From contig OZ116704.1 in NCBI GenBank assembly GCA_964199315.1, forward strand, positions 29,388,001 to 29,452,000: DNA of 64,000 bases, in the 5' to 3' direction. The first letter of the stretch is position 1. Every line of letters begins with the position of its first letter. Below the pieces are notes generated by a model. It was not told the DNA's origin and searched no databases. It saw only the letters and a program-made list of their open reading frames with translations. The position numbers and the translations under genes were made by a program. Shown piece by piece: positions 13,301-20,900 of this stretch. The stretch is from Orbicella franksi. Lineage: Eukaryota.

Positions 13301-13738
13301 CTCCAAGGACAGTGAGATGTATGTATCCACTCACATCCCGGTTTTGCTTTCCGCTGTCGGCAAACATACCTATTTCATGGTTTGCTTTATCAGTGCGGTG
13401 TTTAGGTGCCTTTCTAAACGATTTACTTAAAAGTATTTCTAACGGTTTGGATTCTTTTTCAAGCTTCCACCGCTAGCATTCCTGAGGACACTGAGCCCGA
13501 GTGTGTATGTCCACATGGAATACCGCTGGCTGGTGTGAACGGTGATCCACATGCGGTGAATTGTACGTTATGCGAGAGACCTGGCTCTCGAGGGGGACGG
13601 GCACTAGCAGGCATGATAGCTTTCCGTAGGGCGCAGTCAAAGATGCAACGACTAAAAGGCTTCAGTAAGAGAACCGCAGAAGGTTATGCTGACGCTCTGC
13701 GTCAGTTCGCTGAGAGACATCAGAACGACGACTTATAA
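10321..13738 (+). CDS. Uncharacterised 269-aa protein, 3 exons; candidate N-myristoylated/palmitoylated, mostly disordered, with a C-terminal Cys/His cluster
   Basis: Exons are 10321-10639, 12361-12576 and 13464-13738. Junctions CCAG|gtaaat, tttccttgcaaag|GA, AAAG|gtgaga and tctttttcaag|CT are all phase 1 and give one open 810-nt frame. It starts MGQSMCCLRC and ends ..CVCPHG..CTLCERP..QNDDL*. Confidence 0.8.
11846..12068. mobile_element. MITE with 16-bp TIRs (PIF/Harbinger-like), intronic
   Basis: GGGCCCGTTTCTCGAA ... TTCGAGAAACGGGCCC. The flanks are CAG/GAG, an imperfect 3-bp TSD. Confidence 0.75.
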
Positions 13739-14902
13739 TCTTGTGATTATTGATCGGCAAATTTGTTCTTGCTCTGGATCGATAATCAGATCTAGAACAG
13801 AGCAGAAAATGTGTTGAGATGACCGAGAGGGGCTGAAACAAGAACGTTTTAGTAACTGCTGGAACACTATAACAAGGGCCCGAGACGGAGGTCCTTTAAG
13901 TGTTTGTGGAGTCTGAAGCTCAATAATTTTGCACCTTTGGAGTCCAGAGTTATTAAAATGAATTTGGAACGACAAAGACCTGTAAGAATATGACGGAACA
14001 ATGGAACCCTGTTCCGCTACAAGCCCGAAGGTCTGGTGTAAAAGCTGTTTCAATAATGAACCTTGTACTGCTCAGAAAAAACAAAAAAGGCTTTGTGTTA
14101 TGGCGGGACACACTGTCTTCTGAAGGTTGAACGATAACAAACCTTCAAACAGATGTTAGACATAATCCACAATATAGAAATAAAAAAAGTGGTGTAAGTT
14201 TCAAGAGCAGCTAGTCACACAATAAGATAGTTAAAGAGTCCGTGGAACTCAGCTTGAGCCAAAGAAATGCAATAATCTTATAATAAGTGATTTTATTTAC
14301 ATGTCTTCGAGTGCTGAGTCAGCGTATTGTGTACCGGATCGAAAGATAAAAAGATTTACACTCATGTGTGGTAAATTAATAAATAACCCGTTATTGTTTG
14401 TTTACAGCCGCTGACTGATTTCTTGAAATCGTGATTGAACCGTGAGCTAGCGGTATCGGAGGAGATCATCATTCCTCCCTCGGTCTCCTTCTCAGCTCTT
14501 TTTCTTTTTAGCTTCGATTTTAGTCTTTTGCAATTTTTACCGAGGTCCACAAGACTTTTATTTGAGAAGTCCTCTGGATTTGGGTGAGAAGTTGAAAATG
14601 ACATAGAAAATAGAAAGGGAAACGAGGTATCTTAAGTGCTCTCGTCAGATGGACTCTCGATGGAAAAGTATTACAGGCGTAGCTTTTGAGTCTAAATTTC
14701 AGGCTAGATTCTGAGCGAGACTTAACATAATTTACCAATCGTTGCCGCTGCCGACCCAGAAATGTATGTAACAAATTAATTAATTTTCAGAATCAAAATA
14801 TTTTCAACATTGACTAGGATTGTGCTTTCTACAAACTCAATCTTGGGTTTAGAAATTGGTTGTAGATGTGAAATCCTAATGGGCGAAATTTCGTTATAAA
14901 AG

Positions 14903-16474
14903 CTATGATTGTAAGTTCTCTCTACTTCTAAACAACCAAAGGGTTGATAATAACGAGATCACTAACAACTGCTTATCACTTGTAACTCTAGAAAATCCAT
15001 TAGTTTCTAATTTTTCTGATAGTTTTGTATCGTGAGCGCCTTTTCCTATGACAGCGGTTTCAGTCTCATTGTCTTTGGCTCCTCCCACCTTGTTACACTC
15101 GTGCCCAGTGCAACATCGGACGCAGACTCGTCTCTTCCCAGACCCCACGATTTCTACCTCTCGCCGACATCCGTCGTGGCATGAGTAACCACGCAGTCCA
15201 TCGTCACTGGAGCAACCAAGCATGATTGGCAGAATGCTAAACAAATTAATGAAAAAGACCCTGTAAGTATTAATGGGATAAAGTAAGTCGGAAAGCTCTG
15301 GGGGCAGTTGGGTGGGAAATTGAGAAGGAGGGGAGCCAAGGCTCGTAAAAGGCAACTGCCATTTCAAAAGGTCGTGTGATTCTACTCAATTACACTTCTC
15401 AGCTAAATTGACTGGTATGGAAGACATGAAATAGTTTCCGGAATTTCATGTTCCTTAGCAAACCAGTACTTGATTGATATTAAAGGGTCTCCCGCGGGTT
15501 TTTAACGAATTGAAAGGGAACATTTTTAAAACTTTCGTGACTGGCTGGCGGTTACTTTATTCTCCCAGTTTTTGACACTCGAAATACACCATGGGTACCA
15601 AAGATTGCCATGCACACATGTTGTGCTGTAAAACAAATCCAATTTATCTGTAAGAAACAGAGGGGGGAAAGGTTCATGTTATCAGTGTGGGGAATGATTT
15701 TGAGCTTTGAGATCAGGAACAAAGAAATCCCCGTTACAAAAAACAAGGACCTTCTCTCCCGCTTCCACCCCGCCCCGTGCGTCCCGTGTGATAGCGCCTT
15801 ACCATAATTTGAGTACAGGTTTAGTCAACGCTAGAGCAAGACTCTACTCACCTTGAGTTTGTTCCTGCCGAGCCGCCCTCTTTGTTCAACGTAATGGCAA
15901 AGCATCTATCTCCGGGGGGACACTGCGTGGTTGTCACGCGATCTTGTAGGCACATCCTACCCTGGCATTTAAGGCAGCGAGGGCCCGCGGTCATTAGGCT
16001 CAGCTGCAAAAAAGTATCCCGTCTCCACACGCAACATCCGCGCCCAGGCCACAAACGACCACCAGAGGAAGAGTTGGTGACCAGATTCACGCGGTCTCCA
16101 AGGCCCAGGCAAACGCGTTCACATGAATATTGTCTAGTTTCCCCGGATCCTTTTTCGTTTACGACCGTTTCTTTCTCTGTTGAGACGCATAAATCCCTTC
16201 CACGAAACTTTGCCTTGAGCTTGTAGTCAAAGAAATGTATTTTCCCGTCATTTGGTATTGTGTGATGCACAGCTGACAACAGACGAGGTTTGCTCCGACG
16301 GAAATTGACGGAGATGTTCTGGAAGCGTTTAACGCTCAGAATAACTGAGGTAACGCTACCGCTCGATCCGTCACGCGGTTGGCACGGAATGATGTAACTG
16401 TCCGCCGTGGGGAAGCAGAACCCAAGAAGTCCACATTGAACGAGAAAATTAACAAACAGAGATTGGTAAGCCAT
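14903..16474 (-). CDS. 318-aa protein, 2 exons: signal peptide, putative C1q/TNF-like domain, Ly6/uPAR (three-finger) domain, hydrophobic GPI-like/TM tail
   Basis: Exon 1 is 16474-15852 (TCAAG|gtgagt, phase 2). Exon 2 is 15236-14903 (tttgtttag|C). The joined Cys domain CLKC...C...CPPGDRCF...GC...C..GC...CVRCCTGHECN ends in the CCxxxxCN LU signature. The N-terminus is hydrophobic, and LLVISLLSTLWLF lies near the C-terminus. Confidence 0.85.
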
Positions 16475-17918
16475 CTTTCTGTGTTGCGTTTGCTCTGATT
16501 TCTAACTGAAAAATTTGCTCGCCCGCGAATATTTAAGGGTTCCAAAAACATGGCAACACCTTTCCTCATGCTAGTCAAGTGACGGACGCGATAAGGGTGA
16601 ATCACTTCCGGTTGTGTTTGTTTTGGGTGTAGGTTCCACTTGACTGAACATTACGCCAAAAAAGTCGAAAAATTCGGTCCGAGATTTGTTTATGAACACG
16701 TGGACTGTCAATCAAACTGAGACCAAATAAAGACCAGGTATAAAATGGGGACCTAATCATAAGCTTGTGTTAATTTATACGATTTTTGCTTCAGTGCTCT
16801 CTATATTTAGAAAAGACGTCTTCAATTAATCCACCCCTCGTTCACTTTAAAACATACATGTTCAGTTTTCTCGTCGATGAAACATTTATGTTAGTTCTGA
16901 GAATTTGATGGTAAACTACACTGGCCCTTGCTGATGATTATCTGAAAACTCAGCATATGTCTGAATATCAATGTGTTAACAACGTAAGGAGAAACAAGAG
17001 ATTGATCTCTCAGAAATGGAGTTGAATCTGTGACAAACATGAATCTATTCAAGCGAATTATTCCAAAGAGCCGTGTTTGCGATCAAATAGACAATACAAT
17101 GCCTTCAAGCGGCCGTTTGGCCTGGGGTTGCTGAATAAATAATTCCTCTAAGTAATTAGGTCATCGTTCACAATTCTTCGCAGGGGAAATCGAGAGTAAC
17201 GTGATTTTAATGCGAAAGAAAGGTTGCTTTGCGAAATTGGCTTCCCTATCAAGTAACGTTTCTTTTTATCACCATATTTGTTCATGTTACGTGACATCCG
17301 GTAGTGACGTGTGCCTTAGAGACGACTGAAACAAGCTTGATCACGAGCTTAGGGTCAGCTTAGCCCACAGTTCTTCTAAAATAGGAAGCGTGATACAACA
17401 AAGTTTACTCAAGCACTTAGCAAGCCATAACTAATCTGACAAATGTTTGTTAATACGTGGATGGTGAAGGGACAGGGAAAGACAACCTGACCTTGCGGGT
17501 ACTTTTTATTCGCGTCGATTGTGTTCACTGGATTGGTATACCGTCAAAACGAAATGACCCGAGGCAAGCTACCGAAGCGAGGAACTTGTGCGTTACTATT
17601 GTCAACCTGGGAAGCAGCTCTAGATGAACCAAAATACGACCAAAATGTAGGGTACATTTTATAGAGGGGTGTACCGGGACTATTCGCACGAAAGGGGTGC
17701 CTTTTTGGCCCTTGTTCGAAAAAAGAAATTTCGTTGGCTTTTTGAACTATCGCCTCGACGGAATCGAACTTTCTGGCGATTTAGGAGCTGCAAAAATTAA
17801 CCATACGGCAACAATAACATTAAAACTAGAGTAAAAAAAATCAATGCAGTGAAAGAAATTTAATTTTTCTTTACTCCATTACTATTTATGATGATATTAT
17901 CTTGTTTTGGCCTGTATT

Positions 17919-20900
17919 TCAGTTTTTCATGAGTTCTCTAATGCATGACGTGGCGTAACACGAAGGTTCCAAACTAAACGAAATTTCGATGTTGTTGCAG
18001 AAGTTGTCAAGGCTTCGAGGTAACTCGGTGTGTTCTGTCGCGTCGGTGCATATTGTTTCGTTCTCGCCGAGTCTCGGTCTTTTTACGACATCATTTTTTG
18101 GATTTGAGCCCGTGCTCGCTGCAGAATCGCCAGCGGAGAAATTTCCAGTGCACGCATGTTCGTCTTGCACACATTTCCACGTCAAATCCCCTGGGAATGC
18201 CACAAGTTTTCTATAAGCACCAGGCAAGTTCATTCCCAAAGCTCTAAGCCTGCAACAGAATGGTCGAAAGTATCAATTAGAGCGACAGAAAGAAAGCGAC
18301 TACAATAACCGTGCTAGAACAGTATTCATTATAAGTGTCAGCAGCTCTAAGAACATATTTAAGGGTAGAAATCCAACCTGAAGCTTTTTACGGTCAGCCC
18401 GTCTCTTTCCAGCCTTTCCTTGTACCTGAAAACATTATAGGAGGCAATAATTGAAAGTCAAATATTGAAATCTTCAAGCGCCTCGAACACTAAATCAAAC
18501 CACAGTGGTAGAACCACAACTAAAACCTGTGTTTTTTTTTTTTTTTTTATCGTCAAGCTCGTACGACCGATGGCTACATGCAGTTATTAAAAACTGGATC
18601 ATTGTATATTGCAATTCGAGAGTTTTCATTGGTTTAGCCATCATGGTTTATGAGCCATTAAACCATACTCTACAAATATGGTAAGCGTACGCGTGATTTT
18701 TTGGGGGCGTTTTTATTTCTTTTCTATTTTACAATTAGTTTTCCATATTTTGAGGACGTTCGCACTCGTTGGATATATATCCAACGTACGGTCGTGGAAC
18801 AGTTGTTAATTAGGTTTTTTAATCAATTGTCTGAGGGGTGTATGTAAATTCACGAAGCACTTACTTTTCTCCTACTTCATTTTCGGGGTATTGGACGCTG
18901 TATCCAGGTAGCGGCAAAACCACGTCTTTGAGAAGATATTTTCCTTCGTCATGATCCGATGCGCACCTGACGTGGTCCCTTCCGACGCCACAGGTTTCAT
19001 CTGCGCATAAACTCCTATCACTGTCGTGACTGTCAGCGGTATTCATATTTAACTCATGCGCATTAACAGTTTTATCTACGATCAAGTCTCCTTGAACAGC
19101 CGCTGTCCGACCGTACCGTCGTATCCTGTAGGATGCCATATGATTCCAGACAAGGCTACAGTAACTGTGAATGTACAACAGCCGCATGGAGTATGGGATG
19201 TTAAGCAACGCTTTACGGCAACCATCCTGTACAAGGAAAAAAGTTGTGTTGTTAACCTTGTCCTATTCAAAACAGGCTTTCGTAAGAGTCGCCAACTTCG
19301 GATAAAATTCGGCACGAAATTTTGCGGGCTGGCGATTTTTTAAATTTTGAGAAATCACAGTAATTCTTGGCAGTTCAATGCGTCTTCCCAAAAGTCATAG
19401 CTGGTCTTAAGAAATCGGAAGAATAAAAGGACCAAAACTATGCTCATTTAGATCAGGTATCCAAACCTGCGCTGCTAATCTTTTAATGAATTAATTTGGC
19501 AAGACTATGGTACGAAAAATATGTAAAGGCCCTATTTACAAACCATGTCAGTGCCATGTCTGTGAAGAGCTTTGAGTACCAGTGTTTCACGGACCTTATA
19601 AGAGGGCATTTTACCCAGCGTACCTTGCACGTCGCCTGTCTCGCAGTAATACCTGGGGAAGGAGAAAATTGTGGCAACACATAAAGATTTAGATTTCAAT
19701 CAATTCAAATCAAATAAAAAAAGCAGCGGAATGATTAATCATTTAAGGCGAAAGAGGAATGTCTTTCCAGTTCTTGTCTCGCGAGTTCTGCGTTTCATAG
19801 CGGGAAACCTTTATGTCAATGGCCGAACTTAACAAGATTGGACACTTTGTGACGTTTTATAAGCGATACACAATAAACCAAAGAAAGTTTGAGTACGATT
19901 AGGACTGACTCTATGAACTAGACCTCATGTAAAACGAATTTCAAATCCCCATGCAAAGTCAACAGCTGATGAGATCATAGGAGAAGTAAAAACCAGCTGA
20001 TATGTCTTGATGAACTGCAAAATTCTCAAAACTAAAATCAGAAGAAATCTAAGGCATTTGGTAAGGAGAATTTATAGAAGAAGACTTACCTTTTAGCAGA
20101 GTTGACAGGACTGTCTGGGTTTTGCTCTGATGGAGTCAGAAGAAGCTTGACTGCACGAACCTGAGGACGAAACGAAAATAACAAGATTAGGCGAGTTAAT
20201 ATATGCGAGTTTTTTATACCAATCTCTAAGCGCAGACTGGGCGGTTTTCACTTAAGTGTCCAAAAGTATTTTGTTTGCATCACTACGCTACACGGAGTAT
20301 TTGCTTAAAAACTCGCGCCACTTTTTTGATTCAATGAGAAGTAAAACCAAAACCAATCGTGCTTCGCTCGCACACGTTTTCCCGCGCTTTGCGTCAGCTA
20401 CATGCATTTGCCTCCAGTTTTGATTGGTTCACTGGATTTGTCTGTGTACTTTGTGAATGGCTAGAGTGATTACTTTGATTTTGGTTTCACAAAACTCGAT
20501 TGAAAACTGTTTTATGTAGAGCCAACCCAAACGCCAATTACTCGCGACACTCAAGTAGCGCTCAAACCGTTCTGTGACTTCACGCAGTATGGATGCCTTA
20601 CCATATCTCCTTGTAGCATGGCATGTCCAATGTCACAAGCGTTCACTTCTTTGTCATCCAAACCGAACCTCTGGGGTCCAAAGTAATTCAAAAATCCGTT
20701 CAAAGTCAAGGAGGATATCGAGTCCTGATATTGAAGTTAAAAAAAGTCTCAACTGATTTTTTATAATCGATGATGTTAATTACTGCTTGCATGCAAATAC
20801 TCAAGGGGATTTATAGGACATTACTTATGAAAAAAGTTTTAGGTAAGAAGAAATAATCCTTTGTTAGAAGTTTCTTGGTGTTTTGATGAGGCACATAAGT

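What the first reader, a model, noticed from the sequence alone, without database searches (positions are those of the whole stretch)
14903..16474. Putative C1q/TNF-like domain fused to a Ly6/uPAR three-finger domain in a GPI-like surface protein
Seen: splicing the two ORFs (phase 2) gives a signal peptide, a ~120-aa beta-rich region, a 12-Cys domain ending CCTGHECN, a short spacer and a hydrophobic tail. Known: CCxxxxCN is the LU/three-finger signature, shared by Ly6, uPAR, quiver and TGF-beta receptor ectodomains. Inferred: TIPNDGKIHFFDYKL, V.LGLGDRV.L and TFLQLSL line up with the hallmark strands of the C1q/TNF jelly-roll (xP.DG.Y.F, L..GD.V, TF.G). I know of no described protein with this combination. 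It could be a lineage-specific surface immune or symbiosis recognition molecule, or a decoy receptor. The ORF track splits the LU domain in two, so it is easily missed.
Basis: partly seen in the sequence, partly recalled or inferred. Interest (0 to 1): 0.8.

Follow-up and report, generated by a model that had tools for sequence, protein, structure and literature searches.

The report
Coral Ly6-type surface protein gene
This is a real, spliced and transcribed stony-coral gene for a membrane-tethered surface protein that joins a Ly6/uPAR three-finger domain to an undescribed beta-sheet domain known only from corals and sea anemones; the proposed C1q/TNF identity of that domain found no support.

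Summary
A two-exon gene on the minus strand (exon 1 16474-15852, GT..AG intron 15851-15237, exon 2 15236-14903) encodes 318 aa. Contigs of two RNA runs carry exactly the proposed 15852/15236 joint, and an existing gene model (P0001) uses the same splice. The product has a signal-peptide-like start, a ~135-aa all-beta domain with six Cys, a 12-Cys three-finger (LU) domain ending CCTGHECN, a ~40-aa linker and a 13-residue hydrophobic tail.

The LU reading is supported by the cysteine pattern, weak profile hits to BMPRII, GPIHBP1 and toxins, and an AlphaFold model whose residues 162-259 match uPAR, GPIHBP1, CD59, Lynx1 and ActRII.

The C1q/TNF reading is not supported. No C1q/TNF hit appeared in Pfam for 19 family members, in a PDB profile search or in six structure searches. 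The confident model is an up-and-down sheet of very long hairpins, not a jelly roll. The three cited motifs are not conserved in the family.

The family comprises five subfamilies in stony corals and Nematostella, all "uncharacterized", all with the same architecture.

Best reading: a GPI-anchored (or short-tail) LU surface binding protein with an orphan hexacoral-restricted N-domain. Ligand unknown. Moderate interest. The scan earlier noted other module-LU fusions (FN2-LU) elsewhere in this genome.

The parts
15852..16474 (-). Exon 1 coding part (Met1 to the first two bases of codon 208): signal peptide, N-domain and first half of the LU domain
   Evidence: ORF; sequence; RNA contigs cover 15852-16498; identical to gene model P0001 apart from P186T
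15237..15851 (-). Phase-2 intron, 615 nt, GTGAGT...TTTAG, splitting the LU domain between Cys191 and Cys216
   Evidence: Joint 15236/15852 with CT..AC ends in contigs of RNA runs X1 and X11; zero depth in the polyA run X11 over 15408-15775
14903..15236 (-). Exon 2 coding part (last base of codon 208 to the stop at 14903-14905): second half of the LU domain, linker and hydrophobic tail
16397..16474 (-). Residues 1-26: signal-peptide-like segment (hydrophobic core, ADS|Y candidate cleavage site)
   Evidence: Read from the sequence; helix 3-20 in the model; no SignalP available, so inferred
15980..16396 (-). Residues 27-165: orphan all-beta N-domain with Cys31, 96, 118, 122, 147, 148 and N-glycosylation sequons at N53 and N134
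15852..15979 (-). LU (three-finger) domain, first half: residues 166-208 with Cys167, 170, 175, 185, 191
15092..15236 (-). LU (three-finger) domain, second half: residues 208-256 with Cys216, 227, 231, 246, 249, 250, 255 and Asn256 (CCTGHECN at 15092-15115)
14969..15091 (-). Residues 257-297: low-confidence (disordered) linker with an NET sequon and a conserved small-residue pair (N287-G288), the candidate omega site
   Evidence: pLDDT <50 over 260-294; alignment; the omega site is inferred
14906..14968 (-). Residues 298-318: 13-residue hydrophobic run (298-310) plus 8 polar residues; a GPI-attachment-signal-like tail, or a very short membrane anchor
   Evidence: Kyte-Doolittle scan of 18 family members: all end in a 13-residue hydrophobic run with 0-8 trailing residues

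Best explanation
A two-exon stony-coral gene encodes a 318-aa cell-surface glycoprotein with no signalling domain. In order it has a cleavable signal peptide, a disulfide-bonded all-beta N-domain (~135 aa) with no detectable relatives outside the family, a 12-Cys Ly6/uPAR-type three-finger (LU) domain, a ~40-residue flexible stalk, and a short C-terminal hydrophobic segment. That segment most likely directs GPI anchoring. Like other GPI-anchored LU proteins (CD59, Lynx1, uPAR, GPIHBP1), it most likely acts purely by binding. The N-domain and LU domain would form a composite ectodomain that captures an extracellular ligand or associates in cis with a membrane receptor or channel and modulates it. 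Shown: the gene model, splice, transcription, conservation, LU fold and cysteine pattern, the absence of a cytoplasmic domain, and the absence of C1q/TNF similarity. Inferred: signal-peptide cleavage, GPI anchoring, and the binding or co-receptor role. The partner is unknown.
For: Splice and transcription: the joint 15236/15852 is present in two RNA runs, and gene model P0001 agrees.

Conservation: 29 homologues at E<=1e-62 in stony corals. An exhaustive HMMER scan of 1.84 billion representatives found 25 hits. Those that cover the N-domain also carry the LU domain unless they are truncated calls or fragments. They include Nematostella XP_032226885.2 and Montipora paralogues. There are five well-supported subfamilies. 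Signal/N-domain/LU/hydrophobic tail are retained in the full-length members.

Tail: the protein ends 8 residues after a 13-residue hydrophobic run. More distant relatives end in the hydrophobic run itself.
Against: No GPI or signal-peptide predictor was available. The window's protein and its closest orthologues carry 5-8 partly charged residues after the hydrophobic run, which is atypical for GPI signals and would also fit a short membrane anchor.

The LU domain is below Pfam gathering scores in this protein: Activin_recp 13 bits against a cut-off of 20.9, and UPAR_LY6 9.5 bits against 24.8.

There is no functional, localisation or ligand data for any family member.
Confidence: 0.72

Rival explanations
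1. One reading: the N-terminal domain is a C1q/TNF-like jelly roll fused to LU, giving a trimerising pattern-recognition or TNF-like surface molecule.
For: The region is beta-rich and about the size of a C1q head. Genuine C1q+LU proteins exist in molluscs (PMC13719153).
Against: Pfam gave no C1q or TNF hit at E<=10 in 19 family N-domains. The PDB profile search gave none. Foldseek and VIA searches of PDB, AFDB clusters, AFDB Swiss-Prot and the ESM Atlas listed none. A C1q cluster scored only 0.46 at rank 62 in the language-model feature search. The model has seven strands, mostly 11-17 residues long and joined by tight turns, which is incompatible with a ten-strand jelly roll. The motifs are not conserved in the family.
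Confidence: 0.03
2. The protein is a type I single-pass membrane protein with an 8-residue cytoplasmic tail rather than a GPI-anchored protein. Otherwise it has the same ectodomain function.
For: The hydrophobic run is followed by RSRENLQS, and by 5-8 residues rich in K/R in the close orthologues. This looks like a positive-inside stop-transfer flank. AlphaFold draws a helix over 295-317. LU proteins with a C-terminal TM helix are known (PMC13719153).
Against: The uncharged run is only 13 residues, short for a bilayer-spanning helix. In the other four subfamilies the protein ends 0-4 residues after the hydrophobic run, a classical GPI-signal layout. A conserved N/S/A-G pair lies ~10 residues upstream, as expected of an omega site.
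Confidence: 0.2
3. Its specific function is a membrane-tethered decoy or co-receptor for a TGF-beta/BMP/activin-family ligand, with an LU domain of the receptor-ectodomain type but no kinase.
For: The best PDB sequence hit of the LU profile is the BMPRII ligand-binding domain, E=0.01. Pfam Activin_recp is the most frequent weak hit, 10 of 17 members. The structural matches include ActRII, BMPRII, ALK1, AMHR2 and TbetaRII ectodomains. There is an extra Cys pair in finger 3, as in receptor ectodomains (my own recollection of those structures, not tested).
Against: uPAR, GPIHBP1, toxins and Ly6 proteins score equally well or better structurally. UPAR_LY6 reaches the same best E-value as Activin_recp. 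All E-values are marginal. The loop-1 CxxC...C disulfide motif is of the Ly6/uPAR type. There is no ligand data.
Confidence: 0.12
4. It is a secreted three-finger toxin-like or venom-auxiliary protein, not a surface protein.
For: The three-finger fold is shared with snake toxins. Cnidarians secrete many Cys-rich toxins.
Against: A hydrophobic C-terminal tail is conserved in all 18 members examined. The ectodomain is large and glycosylated, with a long stalk. The gene is expressed at low depth in whole-colony RNA.
Confidence: 0.04

Closest known systems
GPI-anchored Ly6/uPAR (LU) family proteins: CD59, Lynx1, PSCA, GPIHBP1, uPAR
   Same: Signal peptide, a three-finger domain with the ten canonical cysteines and a terminal CCxxxxCN, a stalk, and a C-terminal hydrophobic anchor signal. 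The LU domain is split over the last two exons. There is no cytoplasmic signalling domain. The model of residues 162-259 matches these structures.
   Different: It has 12 rather than 8-10 Cys. It is preceded by a ~135-aa non-LU beta domain that none of these proteins has. GPIHBP1 has only an acidic disordered N-extension, and uPAR and CD177 repeat LU domains. It scores below the Pfam UPAR_LY6 threshold.
TGF-beta family receptor ectodomains (BMPRII, ActRII; Pfam Activin_recp PF01064)
   Same: They give the best sequence-profile hit (BMPRII, E=0.01) and frequent weak Pfam hits. They share the three-finger fold, probably with an extra finger-3 disulfide.
   Different: There is no transmembrane kinase. 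The protein ends 8 residues after the hydrophobic run. It scores below the Pfam threshold. It has the loop-1 disulfide typical of Ly6/uPAR.
Pdcyst-rich of Pocillopora damicornis (GenBank FJ628421; PMC2728513)
   Same: It is a coral LU-superfamily protein with a signal peptide and a predicted GPI signal, and the only coral LU protein with localisation data that I found (calicoblastic ectoderm).
   Different: Pdcyst-rich is a 147-aa single-LU protein without any N-terminal extra domain. No sequence comparison was made here.
Non-standard LU architectures in invertebrates (PMC13719153, 2026): C1q+LU in molluscs, Kunitz+LU in cnidarians; and the FN2-LU coral proteins noted earlier by this scan
   Same: An LU domain is combined with another extracellular module. 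Cnidarian genomes carry ~43 LU proteins each. Other module-LU fusions were noted in this same genome.
   Different: Here the partner module is not C1q, Kunitz, FN2 or any Pfam family. A domain-annotation survey would list this protein as plain 'LU'.
C1q/TNF superfamily
   Same: Only that both are ~130-aa all-beta extracellular domains.
   Different: There is no sequence, profile or structural match. The strand number, strand length and connectivity differ. The hallmark residues are not conserved.

Membership tests
Ly6/uPAR (LU, three-finger) superfamily | Ten cysteines in the canonical spacing (pairs 3-26, 6-13, 19-39, 45-63, 64-69), ending CCxxxxCN | tested here: met
   Cys167, 170, 175, 185, 191, 216, 227 (or 231), 249, 250 and 255 plus Asn256. 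Eleven Cys are invariant in 17-18 family members; Cys175 and Asn256 are present in nearly all. The pattern is taken from PMC4839075. Two extra Cys (231, 246) are present.
Ly6/uPAR (LU, three-finger) superfamily | Three-finger beta fold | tested here: met
Ly6/uPAR (LU, three-finger) superfamily | Significant match to a curated family profile (Pfam UPAR_LY6 PF00021, or the clan member Activin_recp PF01064) | tested here: inconclusive
   Window protein: Activin_recp E=0.21-0.27 (13 bits against 20.9) and UPAR_LY6 E=1.8 (9.5 bits against 24.8). Relatives reach E~4e-4. All the weak hits belong to the three-finger superfamily.
Ly6/uPAR (LU, three-finger) superfamily | [quoted passage not shown] | tested here: met
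   The intron 15237-15851 lies between Cys191 and Cys216, and the tail is encoded in exon 2. Compared with PMC4839075. Unlike the typical gene, the signal peptide is not on a separate exon.
GPI-anchored proteins | C-terminal GPI attachment signal (small omega, omega+2 residues, spacer, hydrophobic end), with anchor addition shown | not testable with these tools
   Only a heuristic was possible. There is a 13-residue hydrophobic run at 298-310, a conserved N/S/A-G pair ~10 residues upstream, and 0-8 trailing residues across 18 members. No NetGPI or PredGPI was available, and there is no experiment.
C1q/TNF superfamily | Match to the C1q (PF00386) or TNF (PF00229) profile, or to any solved C1q/TNF chain by sequence profile | tested here: not met
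   No such hit at E<=10 for 19 family N-domains or for the N-domain profile against the PDB.
C1q/TNF superfamily | Ten-strand jelly-roll beta sandwich | tested here: not met
   The confident model (pLDDT 89-98) has seven strands, five of them 11-17 residues long, joined by 2-7-residue turns. No C1q/TNF entry appears in the listed hits of six structure searches. The best shape matches are secretin sheets, FHA, C2 and a designed beta protein, all at noise level.
C1q/TNF superfamily | Family-wide conservation of the hallmark aromatic and glycine positions | tested here: not met
In the N-domain only Cys96, Cys118 and Cys122 (plus Gly92 in A4) are (near-)invariant.
TGF-beta family receptor kinases | A three-finger ectodomain followed by a TM helix and a cytoplasmic Ser/Thr kinase | tested here: not met
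   The protein ends 8 residues after the hydrophobic run. No kinase domain was found by Pfam.

The most novel reading that the evidence does not exclude
The N-terminal domain is a genuinely new, hexacoral-restricted extracellular beta fold that has been fixed next to an LU domain since before stony corals and sea anemones split. Together the two domains define a new class of GPI-anchored receptor or co-receptor, for example for microbe or symbiont recognition, for a TGF-beta-family ligand, or for protection against pore-forming proteins in the manner of CD59.
Probability: 0.25. Interest if true: 0.55.

Novelty: new variant of a known kind. Interest (0 to 1): 0.33.

Why it matters
LU/three-finger proteins are among the most expanded surface-protein families in cnidarians, at about 43 per genome (PMC13719153). 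Almost none has a known function. This family shows that hexacorals combined the LU module with a lineage-specific beta domain that no domain database recognises. The combination was kept through five subfamilies over the coral-anemone split, which argues for a conserved binding function.

It gives a concrete candidate that is tractable in Nematostella (LOC116610221) for asking what LU surface proteins do in early-branching animals. It also flags an unannotated domain that could be added to family databases.

Tried and rejected
- **Raw-read RNA runs.** X23 and X24 (2026, polyA) gave 0 reads on the stretch, so they provide no test. The splice evidence rests on Logan contigs of X1 and X11.
- **First AlphaFold model.** Built from 19 sequences, it was poor for the LU half (pLDDT <50). 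Its fold searches were superseded by the 43-sequence model.
- **Internal duplication.** The idea that the N-domain is a degenerate LU domain was prompted by weak language-model hits to LU families (scores 0.71-0.79, noise level). hhalign of the N-domain profile against the LU profile found nothing, probability 0.2%. No LU structure aligns to residues 40-165. Rejected.
- **DUF5888, DUF6896 and other Pfam hits.** Each was a weak hit in one or two sequences. Rejected as noise.
- **Alternative in-frame acceptor at 15261/15260.** It would add 8 aa. It was not seen in any RNA contig.
- **Literature.** A search for the NCBI locus names of the Nematostella and Acropora members found no paper. The supplements of PMC13719153 are not held.
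- **Profile-profile test against C1q.** This could not be run because no tool supplied C1q sequences, and I did not type any from memory.

Full report
**1. What is in the sequence**

Two minus-strand ORFs lie at 15848-16474 and 14903-15367. Reading the minus strand, the first ORF runs from an ATG at 16474 to ...AAC TCA AG|GTGAGT at 15852/15851. A polypyrimidine tract ending TTTAG| precedes 15236.

Joining 16474..15852 to 15236..14903 gives a 957-nt CDS of 318 codons plus stop. The intron is phase 2 and 615 nt long.

The splice is not just plausible. Assembled contigs from two RNA libraries (X1, and the polyA library X11) contain exactly the joint 15236/15852, 'skips 615, ends CT..AC'. The polyA library has no depth inside the intron. 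Two raw-read runs of the same species label gave no reads at all and are no test.

A JGI gene model, P0001 (318 aa), uses the same junction. It differs from the window's product at two residues, P186T and A275T. NCBI models from Desmophyllum pertusum, Oculina patagonica, Montipora capricornis and Acropora millepora have the same junction.

More than ten ORF calls on genomic contigs of other corals stop at '...N-S/A/F-R'. This is the read-through of the same AG|GTGA donor, so the intron position is conserved in stony corals. A distant family member (P0049) is encoded without an intron on a 1.4-Mb contig.

**2. Anatomy of the product**

- **Residues 1-26:** a hydrophobic signal-peptide-like segment (inferred; no predictor available).
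- **Residues ~27-165:** an all-beta domain with Cys31, 96, 118, 122, 147 and 148, and sequons at N53 and N134.
- **Residues 166-256:** twelve cysteines, ending CCTGHECN. This is the only CCxxxxCN in any frame of the 64-kb window.
- **Residues 257-297:** low-confidence and probably disordered.
- **Residues 298-310:** a 13-residue hydrophobic run, followed by eight polar residues and the stop.

**3. The family**

A word-indexed search found 29 homologues at E<=1e-62 over exon 1, with identities of 51-100%. Those with names are all stony-coral 'uncharacterized' or 'hypothetical' proteins.

An exhaustive HMMER scan of 1.84 billion cluster representatives found only 25 hits at E<=1e-3. Among them are Nematostella vectensis XP_032226885.2 (31% identity, E=3e-20) and a Montipora paralogue group.

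The full-length members share the same layout: signal, N-domain, LU domain and a hydrophobic C-terminus. A maximum-likelihood tree resolves five well-supported subfamilies. No hit carries the N-domain in any other context.

No paper mentions the Nematostella or Acropora loci.

**4. The LU domain: supported**

- **Cysteines.** Eleven cysteines are invariant across 17-18 members; Cys175 and Asn256 are present in nearly all. The spacing reproduces the canonical LU pattern (pairs 3-26, 6-13, 19-39, 45-63, 64-69, then Asn) described by Loughner et al. (PMC4839075). There is one additional pair (Cys231, Cys246) in finger 3.
- **Profile hits.** Pfam does not reach its thresholds on this protein: Activin_recp 13 bits against 20.9, and UPAR_LY6 9.5 bits against 24.8. 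The weak hits nevertheless all belong to the three-finger superfamily. Activin_recp is hit by 10 of 17 members and UPAR_LY6 by 5 of 17, with best E about 4e-4. A family profile hits BMPRII (E=0.01), GPIHBP1, PSCA, BMPR1A and elapid toxins in the PDB.
[quoted passage not shown] This matches the typical Ly6 gene.

**5. The N-domain: not C1q/TNF**

- **Sequence.** No C1q (PF00386) or TNF (PF00229) hit appeared at E<=10 for any of 19 family N-domains. No C1q/TNF chain appeared at E<=10 when the N-domain profile was run against all PDB sequences.
- **Structure.** Both AlphaFold models give the same strand map. The second model has pLDDT 89-98 over residues 40-165. The strands are 43-56, 64-74, 87-91, 94-105, 113-123, 128-142 and 146-162, and most are connected by 2-7-residue turns. 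This is an up-and-down arrangement of unusually long hairpins. By established knowledge of the C1q/TNF fold, that fold has ten shorter strands with jelly-roll connectivity, which this is not.
- **Structure searches.** Six searches listed no C1q/TNF entry: Foldseek on the PDB, VIA-align on 48,161 PDB representatives, VIA on Foldseek's top 1000, AFDB clusters, AFDB Swiss-Prot and the ESM Atlas. These libraries hold many such structures.
The three motifs are conserved only among the close stony-coral orthologues. Across the five subfamilies, only Cys96, Cys118 and Cys122 are (near-)invariant in this domain.
- **Not a degenerate LU domain.** hhalign gives probability 0.2%. Language-model feature hits to LU families at 0.71-0.79 are at noise level.

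The N-domain is therefore an orphan. It is disulfide-bonded, glycosylated and all-beta, and it is restricted, as far as found, to Hexacorallia. A missing structural match does not prove a new fold.

**6. Membrane attachment**

All 18 members examined end in a 13-residue hydrophobic run. In four subfamilies 0-4 residues follow it, which is the classical GPI-signal layout. In the window's subfamily 5-8 partly basic residues follow. A conserved N/S/A-G pair lies about ten residues upstream, where an omega site would be.

I consider GPI anchoring the most likely outcome (about 0.7). A very short type I anchor is the alternative (about 0.2). Either way there is no cytoplasmic signalling domain.

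**7. How it most likely works**

By analogy with the characterised GPI-anchored LU proteins, the protein should act by binding alone: CD59 binds C8/C9, Lynx1 modulates nicotinic receptors in cis, uPAR and GPIHBP1 capture soluble ligands, and Drosophila Ly6 proteins organise septate junctions (PMC3058042, PMC4839075). The N-domain and LU domain would present a composite surface on a flexible stalk.

The LU profile's slight preference for BMPRII/ActRII-type ectodomains keeps a TGF-beta-ligand decoy or co-receptor role open, at low probability (about 0.12). The only coral LU protein with localisation data that I found, Pdcyst-rich of Pocillopora (calicoblastic ectoderm; PMC2728513), is a single-domain protein. 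It offers context, not evidence.

The binding partner is unknown, and this part of the explanation is inference.

**8. Comparison with what is known, and novelty**

A 2026 survey of invertebrate LU proteins (PMC13719153) counts 563 LU proteins in 13 cnidarian genomes. It lists LU-only, receptor-kinase and Kunitz+LU architectures there, and it reports a true C1q+LU protein in molluscs.

Earlier notes of this scan describe FN2-LU fusions elsewhere in the same genome (not tested here). Module-plus-LU surface proteins thus seem to be a recurrent theme in this coral.

What is new here is the partner domain. It has no Pfam family, no PDB relative and no named homologue, and it is fixed next to LU in five subfamilies since before the coral-anemone split. 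I class this as a new variant of a known kind, an LU surface protein with an orphan N-domain. It is of moderate interest.

**9. Surroundings**

The gene upstream on the same strand (about 17872-19208 and beyond) is a strongly expressed TruD/PUS7-like pseudouridine synthase. It is unrelated.

Downstream of the stop, the polyA library covers 13486-14893 at the same depth as the exons. This suggests a 3' UTR of up to about 1.4 kb, or a neighbouring transcript.

Noticed in passing
window 17872-19208 (minus strand): The upstream neighbour is a strongly expressed gene (contig depth 64 to over 500 in X11) with a GT..AG intron at 18249-18376. An ORF at 18861-19208 matches Pfam TruD (tRNA pseudouridine synthase D, E=1.4e-6). 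It is a PUS7-like housekeeping gene unrelated to the finding.
   Followed up: partly
window 13486-14893: The polyA RNA run X11 covers this stretch downstream of the stop codon at the same depth (~10) as the coding exons, past two AATAAA signals (14562, 14297 on the minus strand). This is either a ~1.4-kb 3' UTR or a separate or overlapping transcript. It reaches the 'orphan three-exon' region noted by the scan at 10321-13738.
   Followed up: no
window 15504-15783: RNA run X1 (not polyA-selected) holds a contig inside the intron with a 3-nt insertion (TGA behind 15707). This is unspliced pre-mRNA or DNA carry-over from another allele, and it shows that X1 alone would not prove transcription.
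   Followed up: no
window 15237-15261: A second possible acceptor (TACAG|G, exon start 15260) lies 24 nt upstream of the used one and is in frame, adding 8 codons. No RNA contig uses it.
   Followed up: partly
window 16528-16536: A TATA-like TTAAATATT (minus strand) sits about 30 nt upstream of the furthest 5' end of the polyA-run contig (16498). This suggests a transcription start near 16500 and a 5' UTR of about 25 nt.
   Followed up: no
L001:3001-3837: The divergent family member P0049 is encoded as one uninterrupted ORF on a 1.4-Mb genomic contig. The stony-coral orthologues all share the intron inside the LU domain, so the intron was gained or lost within the family.
   Followed up: no
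window 15918-15920 and 15035-15037 (codons 186 and 275): There are two amino-acid differences (P186T, A275T) between the window and the otherwise identical database model P0001. These are probably allelic variants. One lies inside the LU domain, next to Cys185.
   Followed up: no
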